This document shows positions 1 through 44,348 of a stretch of DNA of 64,000 nt, piece after piece (the stretch's first letter is position 1; each line of letters starts with the position of its first letter). The notes below the pieces were generated by a model, which ran no database searches, was not told where the DNA came from, and worked only from the letters and a program-made list of their open reading frames with translations. Source of the DNA: Tetramitus jugosus (lineage: Eukaryota; Protista; Heterolobosea); the NCBI GenBank assembly GCA_937625935.1, contig OW569352.1:496001-560000 (forward strand), given 5' to 3'. The position numbers and the translations under genes are program-made.

Positions 1-422
1 GGAGGTTTGAAGTGGGTTGACCTTCGGGGCATGGATGAATTCTGCGCAAAGTCATTTCTTGTCACAAAAATCAAATAAAAAAGAGATTGCCTGAAATTGC
101 TCGAAGTGAAAGATGAAGGACACAGCAACGATTTTTGGAACCCAAATGACCACAATACCTGTTTTTTAAATTTGATAGTGTTTTGGGTGACAATTTGCTT
201 GTTTTCCAGCAGAGCTCTGTTTTGTCGATGAATAGAGATACTTTCTTGAGCCTCTCCAGATACCACAGGCCGCGAACTTTTAGAATGAATCTCAACAATA
301 GCCTGGAGTTCTCTCCGATTAGCGCACGACAGAAACAGCGATATTGTATTCTGTTTTTAGTTATTCCTCCGGAAAGTTGCCCGCCATCAAAAACAACTTT
401 GGACCTAAAAAAATCGAGACCA

Positions 423-713
423 ATGCAACCACGTTCTCTGGGTCAAGTGAGACACATTGTAGGAACAAATTTCCAATCTTGGAAACTGTATCGCACTGTG
501 CTGAGACATCTACCAAAGTTGCCACACGAGAGCTACGACTATTATCATGACTTTGCAAAACAACACTTTTTGGCTCATCAGGACGAAGAAGCTTCAAGAG
601 CTGAAGAGTTGATACAGAGAGGCTACTTCAATTTCAAGTGGGTGTTGGCAAAGTATGGCGTAGAAGTGGATGAGAGTGCGATCATCCCAGAGCAATACAG
701 ACAATCATCGTGA
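423..713 (+). CDS. LYR-motif protein (LYRM9-like, mitochondrial)
   Basis: From ATG at 423 inside ORF 183..713: KLYRTVLRHLPKLP...YYHDFAKQHFLAHQDE...ELIQRG...WVLAKY, a typical Complex1_LYR pattern; 96 aa. Confidence 0.7.
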   Translation: MQPRSLGQVRHIVGTNFQSWKLYRTVLRHLPKLPHESYDYYHDFAKQHFLAHQDEEASRAEELIQRGYFNFKWVLAKYGVEVDESAIIPEQYRQSS

Positions 714-812: not shown

Positions 813-2587
813 TTAATATTCTTCTTCGTATTGTGGTTCAATTGCGGCCAAATCTTCGCTGATTAGGGATGTAGAACCTAGATTGATCAGATTACGAGTT
901 GAGGAAGGAATGATTGTTGCCTGTAGAACGTTCTTGGACATGCTCATTACCTTCATGTATTCAATGTATCTGTCACCAGCAGCACCATCGAGCAAGTTCA
1001 TTTGAGATCTCATGTTTTCCAGCTGAAGGTTAAGTTTGGATTGATGAAGCAAGGATTGGGCCAAAGCTTCACTGGTTGCCTTTTCAAGCAGTGCTTTTCC
1101 TTCAATCCTTGCCTTTTCAATCTTCTCTTTTGTCAGATTATTGTTCTCGATCTCAATGAGATTCTTTCTGAGCTTACTCAAGTTGGTCTCACTTTCAATC
1201 CTCTCCATCTCTGCTTGAGTTTCAGCAGTGTCGTTCAGCTTAGAGCACATGATTCTCATGGATGCCTTAATGGAGTTCTCAAGCAATTGCTCAATCTCTT
1301 TATCCACTGGCTTTATCGCTCTCACATCAATGGAGAACACCAAAAAGTTAAATTCACTGAACAGTCGACCTGTCACAGTCTCGATGACCTTCTTTCCCTG
1401 TTTTGTAACCTCGAGGTTGTACTCCTTGAACAACTTGTCTCTCAACAATTGAGATGAATTAGTGTGGAAATGTTCAAAATCGTTCTTGGACGACTCTTCA
1501 CGGATACGACTTCTCAAACTCTGGCAACTGTAGCCAACAAAGTCACCTGCAAAGATCTTGTGCAAGTTCGCATCATCCAGAATAAACTTCCACTTGTAAG
1601 CCACAGTCAAGTTCAATACTGCATTGTCCTTGGTTCTCACTTCGAATTGATCAGTCATGAAATCAATTCCCAGGCCAATGTTGCACACTCTGATGACGTT
1701 CTCACGCTTTGGGACACCACCTGAAAGGTTGATAACCTTGACAGCTTCATGAGGACCCAACAAGATGCGATCTGGTCCCAACACATACCTCTCCTTGCTT
1801 TTCTTGTAGTCAGTGACACAGACGCATTGATTCTTTTGTAACTGAATAGAGTAAGCATTGGATCTAGATTCGTATGGCAACTGAAGTGCATCATACTCCT
1901 CGTCAGTCAAACTCTTGAGATACTCTTCTTCATTGACTGCGAGAACATAGGACAATGGACCACGCACCATCTTCAGTTCACTCGTGTCCAAATTTCTCAC
2001 ATACACTGCTTCATTGTCCGAGATGTTAGTGGCATCTCGAATAAACTTTTTTGGAACGACAGGTGGAACAACAATCTTCTCATGCTTCTTTGGTATGAAT
2101 AGAGTAGGTCCCTGTACAGTGTACAATTCTCCAGCCTTGCGATCCTTACCAGATTCTTCGTCACTAAAGTCGTCCATTGCCTCAATCACCAAGTACTGAT
2201 TCTTGTTCAACAAACATGCGTTCATTGGCTTCGTGGTCAACTCTTCACCAGGAAACAGAGAAAAGGTCTTTGGTCCCTGAACAACAATTGATTTACCCAT
2301 GTCACACACTTGTTTCTCTGCATTGTATGGATTACTCAACATGCAGTATTGATCCTCTCTAAAATTCACATCATGTGAGCACAACCTGCGTCATGAGTTG
2401 AAACAACTGAAAAAAACCAACAAATTACTTACCTCAATGTAATCTTCTGCTTCTTGGCTCCGACCATACTCTTATTGGCAGGCAAAACAAATCTCAATGG
2501 ACCTTCCAAGAGCTCTGCAGTACCAGTCTCATTGTTCACTACATGAGCATACTCATTGTCATATAAAATATCAGTTACTACGGACAT
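813..2587 (-). CDS. Short major vault protein-like paralog A (5 repeats + shoulder + shortened cap helix), about 566 aa, 2 exons
   Basis: Exon1 2587..2433, GTAAGT intron 2432..2359 ending TTTTAG, exon2 2358..813; splicing restores KITLR-EDQYCMLSNPY. MVP motifs: NEAVYVRNLDT..GP..YVL..NEE, LGPHE..VINLSGGVPKR, LGIDFMTD.FEVRTKDNAVLNL.VAYKW, DFVGYSCQSLRSRIR, SIDVRAIKPVD. Confidence 0.85.
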
Positions 2588-2879
2588 TGTTATTCTACTT
2601 ATTGTTCTTTGTGTGATTGGTTGTTCTCTTTTTCGTCCTTGTCTGTGATGTTCTTTGTCCCTGTGGCGGCTCAACCAGACTCCCTGCTGTTTGGAACTTC
2701 TTTGACAGATCAGGATGAACTTCCAGAGGGACCAGATCAAGGGACCCAACAACTATTCTTGTGGGCGAACTTTGTGTCTATGTTCTTCCACCTACGCACT
2801 CAATTCTGATTGACAAAATAAACCAACATCAAAAACCTTTGACGAAAACACAATCTATATACATAACAACAACAACAAC

Positions 2880-4445
2880 ATGTCACTCTTTTTACTCTAC
2901 CAGAACCAATACGTTCACATTCTGAACAATGACACTGCAGAGGTTCGAACTGAAATCGGTCCTCAACGTATCATCCTCAAGGGTAACGAAGTCTGTAACA
3001 AGATTAATGACTCACTGATTGTCAATGAACGACAATATGCTGTCATCAAGAATCCATTTGATCTCACAAGCAAAAAGTACTTGATGGGTGAGAGAGAAGT
3101 GAGAGTCGGTCCTTGTGTCATCTCTCTACATGCCAGTGAGCAACTCGAAGGTGTTCGCGATATTCATATCCTGAGAAGAAATGAAGCTCTGAGATTGGTC
3201 GCACTGAGAGATCATGAAGGAATGATGGCTGGTCAAGTGTGGCAAGTAGAAGGTCCATGCAAGTACATTCCAAACAAGCACACTGAAGTCAAGAAGAAGG
3301 TTACTTCCATCTTGGTCAATGACAATGAAGGATTGTACGTTCAGAATATTGACACATCAGAGAAAAAATTGGTGTTGGGTCCTTGTGCCTATCTGTTGGC
3401 TGCCAATGAGGAAGTGTACAAGAAGAACTATAGTGAAATGGAGAAGAGATCATTGAATTTGCCTAATGATCCTTCTGAGCAAGCTACTGTCATTCACTTG
3501 AAGAAGAATGAAGCCGTCTGTATTTTAGACAATGAGAAGAATGAGAGAATTGTTCAAGGATTGGGTTCTGTGATCCTGGGACCAGAAGAATATGTCAAGT
3601 GCTTGCATCTGTCTGCAGGAAAGCCAAAGATTCCCAAGCAAGTGTGCGCAGCAAAGATTTATCTCGGTCCTGATTTCACATCAGACAAGTTCGAGATTCG
3701 AACCAAGGACAATGCTCAACTGAGACTCCATTTGACTTACAAGTGGGAATTCTTGGTTGGAGAAAGTGACTCATGGAAGGTGTTTAGCTCTGATTTCATT
3801 GGTTATGCTTGCTCCAGTCTCTGTAGCAAAATTAGAGAAGCAACTGCCGGTTACACGTTCGAAGAGTTCCATGGCAACACAGTAACCATCATGAGACGTG
3901 TATTGTTCCAGGACAACAAGATTGTGATTGAAAATGAGGAGAGAAATGTTCATGGACTACTGTTTGATGAAATTAATCTGTTGATCAGTGAAGTTGATGT
4001 GAAAGAGATATCACCTGTGAATGAGGAAATCAATCGATTGCTCAACGAGTCCATCAAGACCAACATGAAGGTTGTTTGCTCCAAAATGGAGAATGAAGCC
4101 AAGAGAGAATCAGAAATCAAGAAGATTCAAGCTCAGTCAGAGATTGCCAAACTCACTGAAAACTTGATTGACATCCAGAATGAAAATATGGATCTTGATC
4201 AAGTGACCAAGGCTAGAATCGATGGTCAAGCACTGTTAGAGACTGCAAAGGCACAAAAGGAAGCTTCCGAGTTGAAGGAGAAGACAAAGATGAATCTGGA
4301 GACCGAGCATATGAGATCCATGATCGCTCTGCTCAGCACTGAGAACGGTGTTAAACTTCTTGACCTCAAAAGAGCTGAAAATTTGACTCAAGTCAAGAAG
4401 AACATCTACATGGCAAGTGACAGCAAAGTTCAAGTTTCCCTGTAA
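2880..4445 (+). CDS. Short major vault protein-like paralog B (5 repeats + shoulder + shortened cap helix), 521 aa
   Basis: QYVHILNNDT..VRTEIGP (R1-like), NEGLYVQNIDT (R8-like), LGPEEYV..LHLSAGKPK and LGPDFTSDKFEIRTKDNAQLRLHLTYKWEF (R9/shoulder), DFIGYACSSLCSKIR, EVDVKEISPVN, then a long helix. Confidence 0.88.
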   Translation: MSLFLLYQNQYVHILNNDTAEVRTEIGPQRIILKGNEVCNKINDSLIVNERQYAVIKNPFDLTSKKYLMGEREVRVGPCVISLHASEQLEGVRDIHILRRNEALRLVALRDHEGMMAGQVWQVEGPCKYIPNKHTEVKKKVTSILVNDNEGLYVQNIDTSEKKLVLGPCAYLLAANEEVYKKNYSEMEKRSLNLPNDPSEQATVIHLKKNEAVCILDNEKNERIVQGLGSVILGPEEYVKCLHLSAGKPKIPKQVCAAKIYLGPDFTSDKFEIRTKDNAQLRLHLTYKWEFLVGESDSWKVFSSDFIGYACSSLCSKIREATAGYTFEEFHGNTVTIMRRVLFQDNKIVIENEERNVHGLLFDEINLLISEVDVKEISPVNEEINRLLNESIKTNMKVVCSKMENEAKRESEIKKIQAQSEIAKLTENLIDIQNENMDLDQVTKARIDGQALLETAKAQKEASELKEKTKMNLETEHMRSMIALLSTENGVKLLDLKRAENLTQVKKNIYMASDSKVQVSL

Positions 4446-4625: not shown

Positions 4626-5720
4626 ATGTCGAACCAATCATGGTTTCCCCAACACCAACAACAACCTCAACCTCAACCTTTGAATATGAACAGAGAAAAT
4701 GTGTACCATCATCCCCACCCTTCTTCGTCTCGCTACCAACAAGTGAGCGACCAATCAATCATGCAACAATTGCTCCACTCTAGTCACACCCATTCAAATA
4801 ATAATAATAATGAAGGTAGTGGTGTTCAAGCTTACCATATTCATTCACAACCACTACCCCAACAAATTCAATACTACTCCCAAACAAGCAACAATGGTAG
4901 CACAAGTGAACAACAACCATTACAAATGAACAACACCTCACAACAACAACAACAACAACAACAGTATCCCCTTTCCGTAGTGGGTACTTCTCCTCCATCG
5001 CCTTGCTTGTCATCTACGGCGCAACAATTTTCTCAAATGACTATGGCGAATGAACCCGCAAGGACACGACCCTATGATGTCCATGTACACCCCAACAGCA
5101 ACAATATGTCGAATGATGCATATTCCATTCATTCAGGAGCTCAGGAAATGATAACCAATCATCATCCATATCATTATTACTATACCAACAACACAAGTCA
5201 TGTACAACAAGAACAACCAAGTCATGCTTTGCTCTCGACCGAACAGCATTTCAACTTGGAACAAGAGCGCAAACGAAATAGCGTGTATGCTCTTCAACAG
5301 GTCGCAATGAGTCTTCCATCCCCTTCACTACAGTTGAATGAGATGGATGATGAGCTCATTCGTTATTCAGAGTCAATGCTCAGTCGATGTTCGGAACCGA
5401 ACAGGAATACGAACAACAATAGCCATCATATGATATCATTAGAAGACCAAAACAAGAAGATTGAAAAGATTGAGCGATTGAGTCTCTTCCGAAAGGAATT
5501 GATCGATTCTCTGTTTCATTTGTTGCAAGTCCAGCGCCAAAATCAGGACAACTTGCAGCAATGGATCATTGATCAACAACAGCTGCAACAACAACAGTAT
5601 TTACAACAACAACAACAACAAACAGTGTCGGATGCTGGAAATGACAATAACATCATGTGGAATGATTCAATAGAAGAATCCATGTTACCCATGTATGATT
5701 TCAATCATCCGCTCGAATGA
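4626..5720 (+). CDS. Hypothetical Q/N/H-rich low-complexity protein
   Basis: 364-aa ORF with poly-Q/N tracts and one predicted amphipathic helix near the C-terminus; no recognised domain. Confidence 0.55.
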   Translation: MSNQSWFPQHQQQPQPQPLNMNRENVYHHPHPSSSRYQQVSDQSIMQQLLHSSHTHSNNNNNEGSGVQAYHIHSQPLPQQIQYYSQTSNNGSTSEQQPLQMNNTSQQQQQQQQYPLSVVGTSPPSPCLSSTAQQFSQMTMANEPARTRPYDVHVHPNSNNMSNDAYSIHSGAQEMITNHHPYHYYYTNNTSHVQQEQPSHALLSTEQHFNLEQERKRNSVYALQQVAMSLPSPSLQLNEMDDELIRYSESMLSRCSEPNRNTNNNSHHMISLEDQNKKIEKIERLSLFRKELIDSLFHLLQVQRQNQDNLQQWIIDQQQLQQQQYLQQQQQQTVSDAGNDNNIMWNDSIEESMLPMYDFNHPLE

Positions 5721-41495: not shown

Positions 41496-44348
41496 TTATT
41501 TCATGTATGTCTTGGTGACTCTTGATGCAATAGAGGAGACATGGGATTCACTTGGGGCACCAAAGCTGCTGGAACCAAATGAAAAACCAGCCGCAGTGGA
41601 AGACGGCTGCACAGTGGTGGTTCCTGATCCAAATAAACTCCTTGCTTCAGTTGTCAACTTAGAGTGTGAAGCCAGGGATTGAGTGCTCGAATTGAAGCAA
41701 TTGACCACGTGCAAAGTATTGACCTGCACCTTCTTTTCCTTAAAATGACTCTGGATCTTGGTGTTTAGATCTTCTTGTGACATCTCCTTCACTGAATCTC
41801 CCAACTCTTTTAGATAGTCAGACACAACTTCTTCAATCTCAAAATCTTCGTTGGTGCCATTAATAATAATGTCTGGAATCTTCTCGGCATTTTGAAGCAG
41901 GATGCACCTTCCAGTGGTCTTGCGAGCAACAGTGTCCATGAAGAGAGACAAGTTACCGTTATCGCGAGCCCTTCCACAAATACAAGCATAACAAACAACA
42001 TCCATTTGATTCAACTTGTCGGCACACTCCAACCAATCGTGTTCTTCACCATTTGGCATTGAATCACCTGGTTCTCCCATTCCATGCGGTGGAGCATCTG
42101 CAATAATGATACAATACTTCTTAGCATTAGATCTAAACTCAGCTTGAGTGGCATGATGGAGCGCCAAGGCAACAGCTTCTGGGTGATCGCCGCCACCACT
42201 TGCTCCCATTGTATCGACGTAAGCTTTGGCCGCAGTTAGGCTTTCAGTAAATTCATGACACTTGATAATGTTTGGTCCATCACAGTAGTCCTTGTAGGCA
42301 ATCAAACTAAAGCGAATCGTTCCATTACATCTTCTCTTGAGTTCGGACATGATATTCTTGATTGTAGCCTGAGCGACTGAAATTTCCCCAGCCATACTGC
42401 CTGTAGTGTCACACACAATCAACACATCCATATCGATCCTCTTTTGACAGTCTCTTGGCTTGAAGTTCATGGATTCAGAAAACTTGCTGGAAATGAGATT
42501 CTTCATCTCATCTCCCAAATTGTTATCATCAATTGCTCTATACTCTAAGCAGGCATAATACTCTGATTCTGTTAGCCAGGAGAGTGGTTTTACATGTTGG
42601 ACCAGATCCTTTTGAGCAATGTAGGGAAATCGTACACATTCCTTAACCTTTTGTTCATCAACCATGACATGCAACTGCTTGCCCTCGAGCCAATCTTTTA
42701 CGCAATTCCAAACAGAGCTCTCATTGTCGACTCTCAATTGATCACTACCGATAAACTTCAACAGAAACTCTTGGGAGACTGATCTCCATTCAGGCACTTT
42801 TAAAATACACTTCTGTTCATCTAACTCATTCAACATCCACAGTAATTCTTCTTGCTCATTCTTGACTGCAGAGGATACAATCTCCTCGAATTCATCGCTC
42901 TTTACAGTCGCTAATTTTTCTTTGATTTGAGGTCGAATGTTGTTCACAACAGTTGATACTCCAAACTTGGATGCAATCACATAATAGTTGATAATATTAG
43001 CCATTGTAACCGATGAGGTGTTATTAAATTTCACCTCTTGTCCATGCATATTCTCAATGAGTTCTTTGAAAAGACGCTCTGGTTGAAGGACTCCTTCAAG
43101 TTCTCCCTTGTATAGGTACAGCGATTTCAGATCGATGTCCAAAACAATTCTGCCCTCGATGATAGTCTCTACCTTTTGCTTATCAATCATTTCACCAATG
43201 ATTGGACTCATTAGACGCATCAACGCCGAATGAACAAGAAATTGTTGCTCTGATCCATACTTTAGGCACAAATCAGCCTTGTCGTTGTTCAAGAATGCCT
43301 GCAAAGAAACAGGTGCGAATACTGAAGTTGAATTAGAAGGTCTTTCTGGTTGAGATGCTCCAAAAGGTTCTGCTGGTGTTGTGCTTCCAAATCCAAATCC
43401 AAAGGATGTGGTAGTAGTGCCCGTTCCTGAGCTTGTAGCTCCGAAACCTCCAAAGCCAGTTGTGGTTGAGCTTGGAGCCGTTCCAAATCCTGTAGTACCA
43501 ACGCTTGTTCCGAAGCTTAGAGATCCAAATCCTGTTGATCTTGGAGCTCCGAAGCCTGAGCTTCCACTGTTTGTTCCAAAACTTGGAGTATTATTGTTTG
43601 TTGCTGAGCTTGACGAGCCAAAACCTGTGTTTGAACTTGTCGCTCCAAAACCTGTTCTCTTGGCTTCTTCAATATACTTGACTAGTTTTGAAACGGTTCG
43701 ATTTTCCCTCAGCAAAAATGGCCTCAAGTCCACTCCCAATTCTGTACCCAATCTTGAAAGCATGCTAATAGAGGACATTGATGTTCCTCCAGCTTCGAAA
43801 AAGTCAGTTTCTGAGGTGATATTCTCGCTACCCAGTGTCTGTTGCCAATGTGAAATGACCTTGCGTTGTAAATCATTGTGAGTTTCATCTTCACTTGACG
43901 AGGCAAAACCTGAGCTTCCAAAACGAGGTGCTACGAATAGGTCTGATGAACCTCCAAATGAAGGCACTCCGAATGTTGAAGAGCTTGATGTCGCTCCAAA
44001 AGTCGTATTGGTTCCATCCGTGTCTCCAGTATGTGCCAATCCAAAGAGTCCACCACCTGTGTTATTGATTGCTTCAGTGGGTTGAGTAGCAGCTGCTAGT
44101 GAGAATGATGGTTCTGGCTCACTTGCACCAAATGAAAAAGTTGTAGTTGAGCCAGTTTCTGTTGTTGTTGTTGGTGATGGACCAAATGAGAATCCAGATA
44201 GTGTTGTTGGTTCTGTTGTTGAACTTGGAAGAGCTGAACCAAATGAGAATCCACCAGTCGGTGCACTTTCTGTTTCTTCTGTGCTGAACGAGAATGACGA
44301 TCGTCTGTCTGAAGTGAAGGGTTTGGTTTCCTCGGAACTGGAAGGCAT
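41496..44348 (-). CDS. Multidomain protein: FG/FSFG repeats + phosphopantetheine carrier (PCP/ACP) + BTB/BACK + vWA
   Basis: FSFG/GFG repeats; W..TLG..I....DFFEAGGTSM; ADLCL..FLVHSALMRLMSP (BTB); SDQLRVDNESSVWNCVKDW..CVRFPYI (BACK); DVLIVCDTTGSM, GGGDHPEAV, IADAPPHG (vWA). Confidence 0.8.
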   Translation of the reverse strand: MPSSSEETKPFTSDRRSSFSFSTEETESAPTGGFSFGSALPSSTTEPTTLSGFSFGPSPTTTTETGSTTTFSFGASEPEPSFSLAAATQPTEAINNTGGGLFGLAHTGDTDGTNTTFGATSSSSTFGVPSFGGSSDLFVAPRFGSSGFASSSEDETHNDLQRKVISHWQQTLGSENITSETDFFEAGGTSMSSISMLSRLGTELGVDLRPFLLRENRTVSKLVKYIEEAKRTGFGATSSNTGFGSSSSATNNNTPSFGTNSGSSGFGAPRSTGFGSLSFGTSVGTTGFGTAPSSTTTGFGGFGATSSGTGTTTTSFGFGFGSTTPAEPFGASQPERPSNSTSVFAPVSLQAFLNNDKADLCLKYGSEQQFLVHSALMRLMSPIIGEMIDKQKVETIIEGRIVLDIDLKSLYLYKGELEGVLQPERLFKELIENMHGQEVKFNNTSSVTMANIINYYVIASKFGVSTVVNNIRPQIKEKLATVKSDEFEEIVSSAVKNEQEELLWMLNELDEQKCILKVPEWRSVSQEFLLKFIGSDQLRVDNESSVWNCVKDWLEGKQLHVMVDEQKVKECVRFPYIAQKDLVQHVKPLSWLTESEYYACLEYRAIDDNNLGDEMKNLISSKFSESMNFKPRDCQKRIDMDVLIVCDTTGSMAGEISVAQATIKNIMSELKRRCNGTIRFSLIAYKDYCDGPNIIKCHEFTESLTAAKAYVDTMGASGGGDHPEAVALALHHATQAEFRSNAKKYCIIIADAPPHGMGEPGDSMPNGEEHDWLECADKLNQMDVVCYACICGRARDNGNLSLFMDTVARKTTGRCILLQNAEKIPDIIINGTNEDFEIEEVVSDYLKELGDSVKEMSQEDLNTKIQSHFKEKKVQVNTLHVVNCFNSSTQSLASHSKLTTEARSLFGSGTTTVQPSSTAAGFSFGSSSFGAPSESHVSSIASRVTKTYMK

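What the first reader, a model, noticed from the sequence alone, without database searches (positions are those of the whole stretch)
813..4445. Head-to-head pair of shortened major vault proteins: a candidate two-subunit 'mini-vault'
Seen: two diverged paralogs (about 566 aa after splicing, and 521 aa) transcribed divergently. Each has only five vault-type repeats (R1-like, R2-like, one R3/R7-like, R8-like, R9-like), the shoulder domain, and a cap helix of about 105 aa ending in a short SPFH-like tail. Established: canonical MVP is about 850-890 aa with nine repeats and a roughly 155-aa cap helix, and self-assembles into the vault barrel. Inference: both genes share the same internal loss (about four repeats plus about 50 aa of cap helix) while keeping the R1 waist, shoulder and helix. 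This argues for a selected architecture rather than decay, and predicts a shorter and possibly narrower particle, plausibly a co-expressed hetero-oligomer, or an intermediate between vaults and SPFH cages.
Basis: partly seen in the sequence, partly recalled or inferred. Interest (0 to 1): 0.88.

Follow-up and report, generated by a model that had tools for sequence, protein, structure and literature searches.

The report
Ancient gene pair for a mini-vault
This soil amoeba's only vault genes are two short, jointly transcribed versions of the major vault protein; short forms were already noticed in Naegleria, but their head-to-head pairing is shared with distant jakobid-like flagellates, which points to an unstudied small two-subunit vault cage.

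Summary
Both genes are real, intact and transcribed. A is 566 aa (74-nt intron spliced in RNA); B is 521 aa. They are this heterolobosean genome's only MVP genes. Each has five repeats (R1, R6, R7, R8, R9 types), the shoulder and a 104-105 aa cap helix.

The short form is not new: two such paralogs were described in silico in Naegleria (2013) and in jakobids (2025). No experimental study was found.

New here: A and B are two ancient orthologue groups, each containing jakobid and heterolobosean members. They sit head-to-head at five loci (this genome, a close relative, Acrasis, two jakobid-like contigs) with no shared flanking gene, but are apart in Naegleria. Their tails differ in a conserved, paralog-specific way, as in alternating SPFH heteromers. 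A published helix-length rule predicts about 28-30 subunits per ring instead of 39.

In the tree their nearest kin are short-cap MVPs of Nanoarchaeota, a CPR bin and a virus-like contig, so 'internal loss' is unproven; eukaryote monophyly was not rejected (AU p=0.147). Canonical waist residues are absent, so closure into a barrel is open. An earlier scan note covers the same DNA.

The parts
2433..2587 (-). Short MVP paralog A, coding exon 1 (R1-type repeat); transcript reaches at least 2637
2359..2432 (-). 74-nt GT..AG intron of gene A
   Evidence: spliced in L007 and in RNA runs X1 and X3
813..2358 (-). Short MVP paralog A, exon 2 (R6-, R7-, R8-, R9-type repeats, shoulder, cap helix, tail); whole protein 566 aa, 64 kDa
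1302..1670 (-). Gene A shoulder (SPFH) domain, aa 282-404
987..1301 (-). Gene A cap helix, aa 405-509 (105 aa)
   Evidence: AlphaFold2 model of the 99%-identical P0044
816..986 (-). Gene A tail: short helix, A-type ATIIPS strand motif, acidic extension
2588..2879 (.). 292-bp spacer between the two start codons; core about 2638-2867 is not covered by RNA contigs; presumed bidirectional promoter (inferred)
   Evidence: no shared motif above chance
2880..4445 (+). Short MVP paralog B, intronless, 521 aa, 59 kDa
2883..3665 (+). Gene B five repeats: R1-, R6-, R7-, R8-, R9-type (aa 2-262)
3666..4022 (+). Gene B shoulder (SPFH) domain, aa 263-381
4023..4334 (+). Gene B cap helix, aa 382-485 (104 aa)
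4335..4442 (+). Gene B short tail: helix 490-503 plus terminal strand-like motif; lacks the canonical TDG..PINLF cap-disc motif

Best explanation
A and B are the two subunits of one small vault-type cage, made from a shared bidirectional promoter. Shown: both are intact, transcribed five-repeat MVPs, the only MVPs found in this genome; A and B split before jakobids and heteroloboseans diverged; the head-to-head layout recurs in both lineages. Inferred: shoulder domains and cap helices pack side by side as in vaults and other SPFH cages, with A and B mixed, probably alternating. The two different tails would take the inward and outward positions at the cap, as in HflK/C, flotillin, erlin and prohibitin. 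The 104-105 aa helix predicts about 29 +/- 2 subunits per ring, so 14-15 A/B pairs, about 1.7-1.9 MDa per cup and roughly 29-31 nm wide if subunit spacing is vault-like. With four repeats fewer, the wall is shorter. It most likely acts as a cytosolic or peripherally membrane-bound protein cage without PARP4 or full TEP1. Whether two cups join through R1 into a closed barrel is about even odds.
For: Only two MVP loci in the genome. Intron spliced and both genes present in the same RNA runs, spacer uncovered. Tree: clade A 100/97, clade B 96/90, each with a jakobid and a heterolobosean subclade. One A plus one B in this genome, L003, Acrasis, Andalucia, Stygiella, L015 and L033; two short genes in each Naegleria species. 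Head-to-head in the window, L003, L004 (Acrasis), L015 and L033, with no flanking gene shared between the compared loci. Andalucia's two genes have near-adjacent tags 00780 and 00782. Paralog-specific tail motifs hold from jakobids to Naegleria. Fold matches the vault chain, Z 29.4 over 473 residues; R5-R7 crystal rmsd 1.6 A over 141. Helix-length rule n = 0.1782x + 10.22 and alternating-tail principle from PMC12624060, computed. Heteromeric vaults exist in trypanosomes (PMC12547018) and probably Dictyostelium (PMC13100048).
Against: No particle has been observed and no multimer model could be run. The genes are not within 10 kb of each other in Naegleria, so linkage is dispensable. Daly et al. 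docking favoured a homo-oligomer of one Naegleria paralog (PMC3595041). Head-to-head layout can arise from the original inverted duplication and shows co-regulation at most. The subunit number is an extrapolation from a regression on a handful of structures. RNA evidence is from assembled contigs of related strains and gives no levels.
Confidence: 0.6

Rival explanations
1. A and B form an open, single-cup SPFH-like cage (a half vault) that caps membranes or cargo and does not join waist to waist. This is compatible with the A/B heteromer but differs in how it works.
For: Human waist residues R9 and D39 (PMC12280208) are kept in 52/74 and 56/74 (D or E) canonical MVPs but in none of about 34 short forms scored; several B proteins begin only a few residues before the first R1 strand. 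The tail lacks the canonical cap-disc motif. Vaults bind membranes in situ (PMC13100048).
Against: R1-type repeat is kept at the N-terminus in nearly all short forms. No transmembrane or obvious membrane anchor is seen in the models. The hydrophobic residue that replaces R9 could form another waist contact. The position mapping was ungapped and approximate.
Confidence: 0.3
2. A and B are co-regulated but build separate homo-oligomeric mini-vaults or are interchangeable subunits without fixed order.
For: Single short-cap genes in archaeal, CPR and virus-like loci have no partner nearby, so the fold can presumably self-assemble. Docking in PMC3595041 favoured a homomer. Erlin paralogs can each assemble alone (PMC12624060).
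Against: The 1 A + 1 B set is kept in every lineage with enough data. Paralog-specific tails and linkage over deep time are more easily explained by mutual dependence.
Confidence: 0.2
3. Origin rival 1: the short proteins come from a canonical nine-repeat eukaryotic MVP by deletion of R2-R5 and about 50 residues of cap helix in the jakobid-heterolobosean ancestor.
For: Repeat order R1-R6-R7-R8-R9 equals canonical minus R2-R5. A tree holding all canonical plus discoban short MVPs together is not rejected (AU p=0.147). Euglenozoa have full-length MVPs (PMC12547018).
Against: The free tree joins discoban short MVPs to prokaryotic and virus-like short-cap MVPs (100/98) and apart from canonical MVPs (100/100). 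They share the RTKDNA motif and a 138-166 aa post-shoulder tail against ETxDHA and 200-230 aa. The same two deletions would have to be present in the prokaryotic forms, which then must derive from eukaryotes.
Confidence: 0.3
4. Origin rival 2: the five-repeat, short-cap form is the older architecture, kept from or regained from prokaryotes; seven- and nine-repeat MVPs grew from it by duplicating the R6-R7 unit and lengthening the helix.
For. R2 resembles R6 and R3-R5 resemble R7. Seven-repeat forms R1-R2-R3-R6-R7-R8-R9 exist and lie between the two groups in the tree. Nanoarchaeota-type proteins show independent expansions (six R1-type in P0066, five R6-type in P0069). Five-repeat Asgard MVP (PMC12962969) and one-repeat archaeal forms (PMC13607799) are published.
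Against: The tree is unrooted, 257 columns, and has no Asgard sequence. The AU test is not significant. Prokaryotic holders are sparse (2 of 201 genomes over the cut-off in the CPR bin's phylum) and are small-genome lineages prone to transfer, so the direction is unknown.
Confidence: 0.5
5. The genes are decayed or mis-annotated fragments of full-length MVPs.
For: None found.
Against: Open frames, spliced transcripts, 26 of 39 listed strain variants synonymous, same length and architecture across jakobids and heteroloboseans, no full-length MVP elsewhere in the genome.
Confidence: 0.01

Closest known systems
Naegleria gruberi short MVPs D2V5B9 (559 aa) and D2W0Z9 (530 aa); short MVPs of Andalucia and Stygiella (PMC3595041, PMC3762200, PMC12547018)
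   Same: Same family: two paralogs of 520-570 aa, about 35-38% identical to each other, fewer repeats, no canonical cap-end fold. Window A groups with the N. gruberi 559-aa protein (47% identical), window B with the N. lovaniensis 530-aa protein (51%).
   Different: Here the genes are head-to-head, 292 bp apart; in Naegleria no partner lies within 10 kb. In the passages I read, these papers do not define A/B orthologue groups, repeat types, linkage or prokaryotic sister forms, and report no experiments on these proteins.
Canonical vault (rat/human MVP, 78-mer, D39; e.g. PDB 4V60, 9BW5)
   Same: MVP repeats, shoulder/SPFH domain and long cap helix in the same order and fold.
   Different: Five instead of nine repeats (R2-R5 types absent, overlapping the R3-R5 region used for PARP4 MINT binding in PMC12280208); helix 104-105 instead of about 155 aa; no TDG..PINLF cap-disc motif; waist R9/D39 absent; two deeply diverged subunits.
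Heteromeric SPFH cages (HflK/C, flotillin 1/2, erlin 1/2, prohibitin 1/2; PMC12624060)
   Same: SPFH domain plus long helix plus short helix and strand tail; two paralogs with distinct tails; predicted ring size in their range.
   Different: No transmembrane or lipid-anchor segment; five MVP repeats precede the SPFH domain; sequence identity only 9-13%.
Asgard archaeal five-repeat MVP (PMC12962969)
   Same: Five repeats, shoulder, cap helix.
   Different: Single gene, modelled as a 10-mer cup with modest confidence. Its sequence could not be fetched, so its relation to this family is untested.
Trypanosome three-paralog vault (PMC12547018) and Dictyostelium MvpA/MvpB vault (PMC13100048)
   Same: Vaults built from more than one MVP paralog.
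   Different: Those subunits are full-length and come with TEP1 (and vault RNA in trypanosomes).

Membership tests
MVP protein family | MVP shoulder (SPFH-type) domain | tested here: met
   PF11978 full length in both, 116 and 104 bits
MVP protein family | N-terminal tandem vault repeats | tested here: met
   Five per protein by Pfam, profile typing and AlphaFold2
MVP protein family | Long cap helix after the shoulder | tested here: met
   104 and 105 aa continuous helix
Canonical vault MVP | Nine repeats R1-R9 | tested here: not met
   R1, R6, R7, R8, R9 types only; no hidden exons
Canonical vault MVP | About 155-aa cap helix and cap disc with TDG..PINLF motif | tested here: not met
   Post-shoulder tail 140 aa (B) and 162 aa (A) against 200-230 aa; motif absent
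Canonical vault MVP | R1 waist polar pair R9/D39 | tested here: not met
   Replaced in all short forms scored; N40/E41 positions partly kept (residues)
Canonical vault particle | Self-assembly into a closed barrel | not testable with these tools
   Needs multimer modelling or EM
Canonical vault particle | Minor components TEP1, PARP4, vault RNA encoded in the genome | tested here: inconclusive
   No DUF4062 hit; PARP and VIT hits never in one reading frame; RF00006 blank but its control also blank; one TROVE-DUF5920-RCC1-BTB protein exists
Discoban short MVP (Naegleria/jakobid type) | 520-570 aa, two paralogs, no full-length MVP in the genome, groups with Naegleria and jakobid short MVPs | tested here: met
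Membrane-anchored SPFH cage proteins | Membrane anchor upstream of the SPFH domain | tested here: not met
   Beta-sheet repeats occupy that place in both models
Membrane-anchored SPFH cage proteins | CC2 helix plus C-terminal strand cap | tested here: inconclusive
   Helix break and short second helix predicted; tail profile scores the genome's prohibitin-like protein 3.7 bits, shuffles up to 2.8, canonical MVP tails up to 3.4
Heteromeric SPFH cages | Two paralogs alternate in one ring | not testable with these tools
   Indirect support only: conserved pair, linkage, paralog-specific tails

The most novel reading that the evidence does not exclude
Jakobids and heteroloboseans build an obligate A/B alternating mini-vault of about 28-30 subunits per ring from a gene pair linked since their common ancestor. 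It keeps the prokaryotic five-repeat, short-cap architecture from which the 39-fold vault grew, and works without PARP4, full TEP1 or room for a ribosome.
Probability: 0.3. Interest if true: 0.82.

Novelty: new variant of a known kind. Interest (0 to 1): 0.58.

Why it matters
What vaults do is a long-standing open question. A natural minimal version in culturable, harmless amoebae and flagellates (Naegleria gruberi, Acrasis, Andalucia) would separate what the shell does from what TEP1, PARP4, vault RNA and lumen size add. It gives sharp tests: ring number near 28-30, an A/B cap, membrane binding, NAD+/ADP-ribose binding, and exclusion of 80S ribosomes, which Dictyostelium vaults enclose. It would link SPFH cages to vaults structurally, test the helix-length rule for cage size, and offer a smaller nanocage scaffold. 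The caveat is that the short proteins themselves were noted in 2013 and 2025; the additions here are the ancient A/B split, the linkage, the repeat typing and the prokaryotic sister group.

Tried and rejected
Hidden exons restoring nine repeats: rejected. Alternative in-frame acceptor at 2386: not used in the transcripts seen. Full-length MVP elsewhere in the genome: none with PF11978 or an 844-aa MVP query. Vault RNA near the genes or genome-wide: nothing (the latter had no working control). TEP1: the only TROVE gene is fused to RCC1 and BTB and has no DUF4062, NACHT or WD40 hit; Atlas neighbours are generic TROVE/Ro60 clusters. Shared promoter motif: TGGAACT-like words occur in the window and L003 spacers, but the count is at chance level. 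Viral contig scan found nothing, and BFVD gave only Band 7 proteins. Asgard MVP sequences could not be retrieved. AU test did not reject eukaryote monophyly. Following the operators' note, the window's spliced gene A was searched exon by exon and never joined; where a whole protein was needed I used P0044, a 99%-identical natural transcript product returned by the database.
Full report
Observation. Gene B is an intronless 521-aa ORF at 2880-4445 (+). Gene A runs on the minus strand: exon 1 at 2587-2433, a 74-nt GT..AG intron at 2432-2359, exon 2 at 2358-813, 566 aa in all. A 99%-identical transcript contig has exactly this junction and extends from 2637 to 776. Two soil metatranscriptomes show the same 74-nt skip. 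Three RNA runs hold both genes as separate contigs and leave the spacer core uncovered, while a further run (probably DNA) covers it. Of 39 listed strain variants, 26 are synonymous. Both proteins carry MVP_shoulder and Vault repeats, match solved MVPs at E 1e-52 to 1e-63 and are 38% identical. As the operators asked, the window's gene A was searched exon by exon and the joined step was left out; the database protein P0044 stood in where a whole chain was needed.

Anatomy. AlphaFold2 models show five beta-sheet repeats, the shoulder, a continuous helix of 104 (B) or 105 (A) residues, a break, a 14-18 residue helix and a low-confidence tail. The B model aligns with the human vault chain at Z 29.4 and with the R5-R7 crystal region at rmsd 1.6 A; SPFH cages follow at Z 10-11. 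Profile comparison with 77 canonical MVPs types the repeats as R1, R6, R7, R8 and R9, so relative to the canonical protein R2-R5 are missing. The post-shoulder tail is bimodal across homologues: 138-166 aa with an RTKDNA shoulder motif, or 200-230 aa with ETxDHA and the TDG..PINLF cap motif. The SPFH likeness of the tail is visible in layout but was not significant in a profile test.

Genome context. The 26-Mb genome has only these two MVP loci. Homologues place it among heteroloboseans near Acrasis and Naegleria; the species was not identified. No TEP1-type DUF4062, no PARP-VIT fusion and no Rfam vault RNA were found (the RNA search had no working control). One TROVE-DUF5920-RCC1-BTB protein exists on contig 47.

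What is already published. Daly et al. described two short Naegleria gruberi MVPs of 559 and 530 aa, 35% alike, with fewer repeats, raised a hetero-oligomer, and left gain or loss open (PMC3595041); they noted the missing C-terminal fold (PMC3762200). A 2025 study found only short MVPs and no TEP1 in jakobids and heteroloboseans and lists the Andalucia and Stygiella pairs (PMC12547018). A five-repeat Asgard MVP (PMC12962969) and one-repeat archaeal forms (PMC13607799) are reported. I found no experimental study and no mention of head-to-head linkage; the library omits most subscription papers.

What is new. (1) A and B are old orthologue groups. In the careful tree, clade A (100/97) and clade B (96/90) each split into a jakobid and a heterolobosean subclade (bootstrap not fully settled). 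(2) The head-to-head layout recurs in a close relative (L003), in Acrasis kona with about 100 bp between the starts (L004), and in two contigs whose genes group with Andalucia (L015; L033). No flanking gene is shared between the compared loci or with 20 kb left and 60 kb right of the pair here. Andalucia's genes are tagged 00780 and 00782, orientation unknown. Naegleria has lost the linkage. These loci are related by descent, so they count as one ancestral arrangement kept in two lineages, not five independent events. (3) Tails are paralog-specific across both lineages: A has a hydrophobic strand ending in Pro-Ser and often an acidic extension; B usually has Gln-x-Trp and ends soon after. (4) The nearest kin in the free tree are single short-cap MVPs from Nanoarchaeota/Woesearchaeota genomes, a CPR bin and a virus-like contig, joined at 100/98. 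Seven-repeat forms lie between them and canonical MVPs, and two archaeal-type proteins expanded other repeats independently. A tree with all canonical and short eukaryotic MVPs together is 16.5 log-likelihood units worse but not rejected (p=0.147), and the tree has no root, so loss, retention and transfer all remain possible. I lean to five repeats being older (about 0.5 against 0.3).

How it most likely works. By homology, shoulders and helices pack laterally into a cup. In heteromeric SPFH cages two paralogs alternate and their tails take different paths at the cap, and subunit number follows helix length as n = 0.1782x + 10.22 within two copies (PMC12624060). That gives 28.8-28.9 here and 38 for a 156-aa vault helix (the rat helix length is from my own knowledge). 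An alternating ring needs an even number, so 28 or 30, about 1.7-1.9 MDa per cup from masses of 64 and 59 kDa. Scaling the 400 A vault width gives about 29-31 nm, probably too tight for an 80S ribosome (size from my own knowledge), which Dictyostelium vaults enclose (PMC13100048). All of this is inference. I give 0.6 to a mixed A/B cage. Open cup against closed barrel is unresolved, and separate homomers get 0.2. Decay is excluded.

Verdict. The proteins are members of the MVP family and of the already noted discoban short type; they fail three defining features of canonical vault MVP. As a system, a linked two-subunit mini-vault is an uncharacterised variant of the vault with clear, cheap tests. 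Interest 0.58.

Noticed in passing
G000:C47:242543-247102 (L022:2544-7103, +): 1519-aa protein with TROVE, DUF5920, RCC1 repeats and BTB: a TEP1/Ro60-like RNA-binding module on an unusual C-terminal half; candidate partner of the mini-vault or an unrelated Ro-type protein.
   Followed up: partly
L016:4339-6720 (P0066) and P0069: Archaeal-type short-cap MVPs with independent repeat expansions: six R1-type repeats in P0066, five R6-type repeats in P0069.
   Followed up: partly
L013:7001-8587 (P0074): Short-cap five-repeat MVP on a 127-kb contig of small unannotated ORFs that looks viral; Atlas also lists MVP-shoulder clusters rich in Uroviricota.
   Followed up: partly
L026, L027, L028, L009, L008: Single short-cap MVP genes in Nanoarchaeota/Woesearchaeota genomes and a Candidatus Uhrbacteria bin; an HTH-CBS gene lies near the MVP in both L009 and L016.
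   Followed up: partly
P0061, P0078, P0085, P0131, P0210, P0041: Seven-repeat MVPs (R1-R2-R3-R6-R7-R8-R9), some with short and some with long caps, intermediate between five- and nine-repeat forms.
   Followed up: partly
window 4439: RNA contigs of related strains carry a 10-nt duplication around gene B's stop codon; the protein is unchanged.
   Followed up: yes
G000:C45:358368-372102: Four PARP-domain genes in tandem on the minus strand beside a VIT-domain gene on the plus strand; not fused, so not PARP4 as such.
   Followed up: no
L015:1-4579: A gene called at 13,701 aa ends next to the MVP pair in this jakobid-like contig.
   Followed up: no
window 41496-44348 (-): 950-aa ORF with phosphopantetheine-attachment, BACK and vWA domains, an unusual combination.
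   Followed up: no
window 4626-5720 (+) and 183-713 (+): Right neighbour is a Gln/Asn/His-rich ORF without Pfam match; left neighbour carries a LYR-motif (Complex1_LYR) domain. Neither is shared with other MVP-pair loci.
   Followed up: partly
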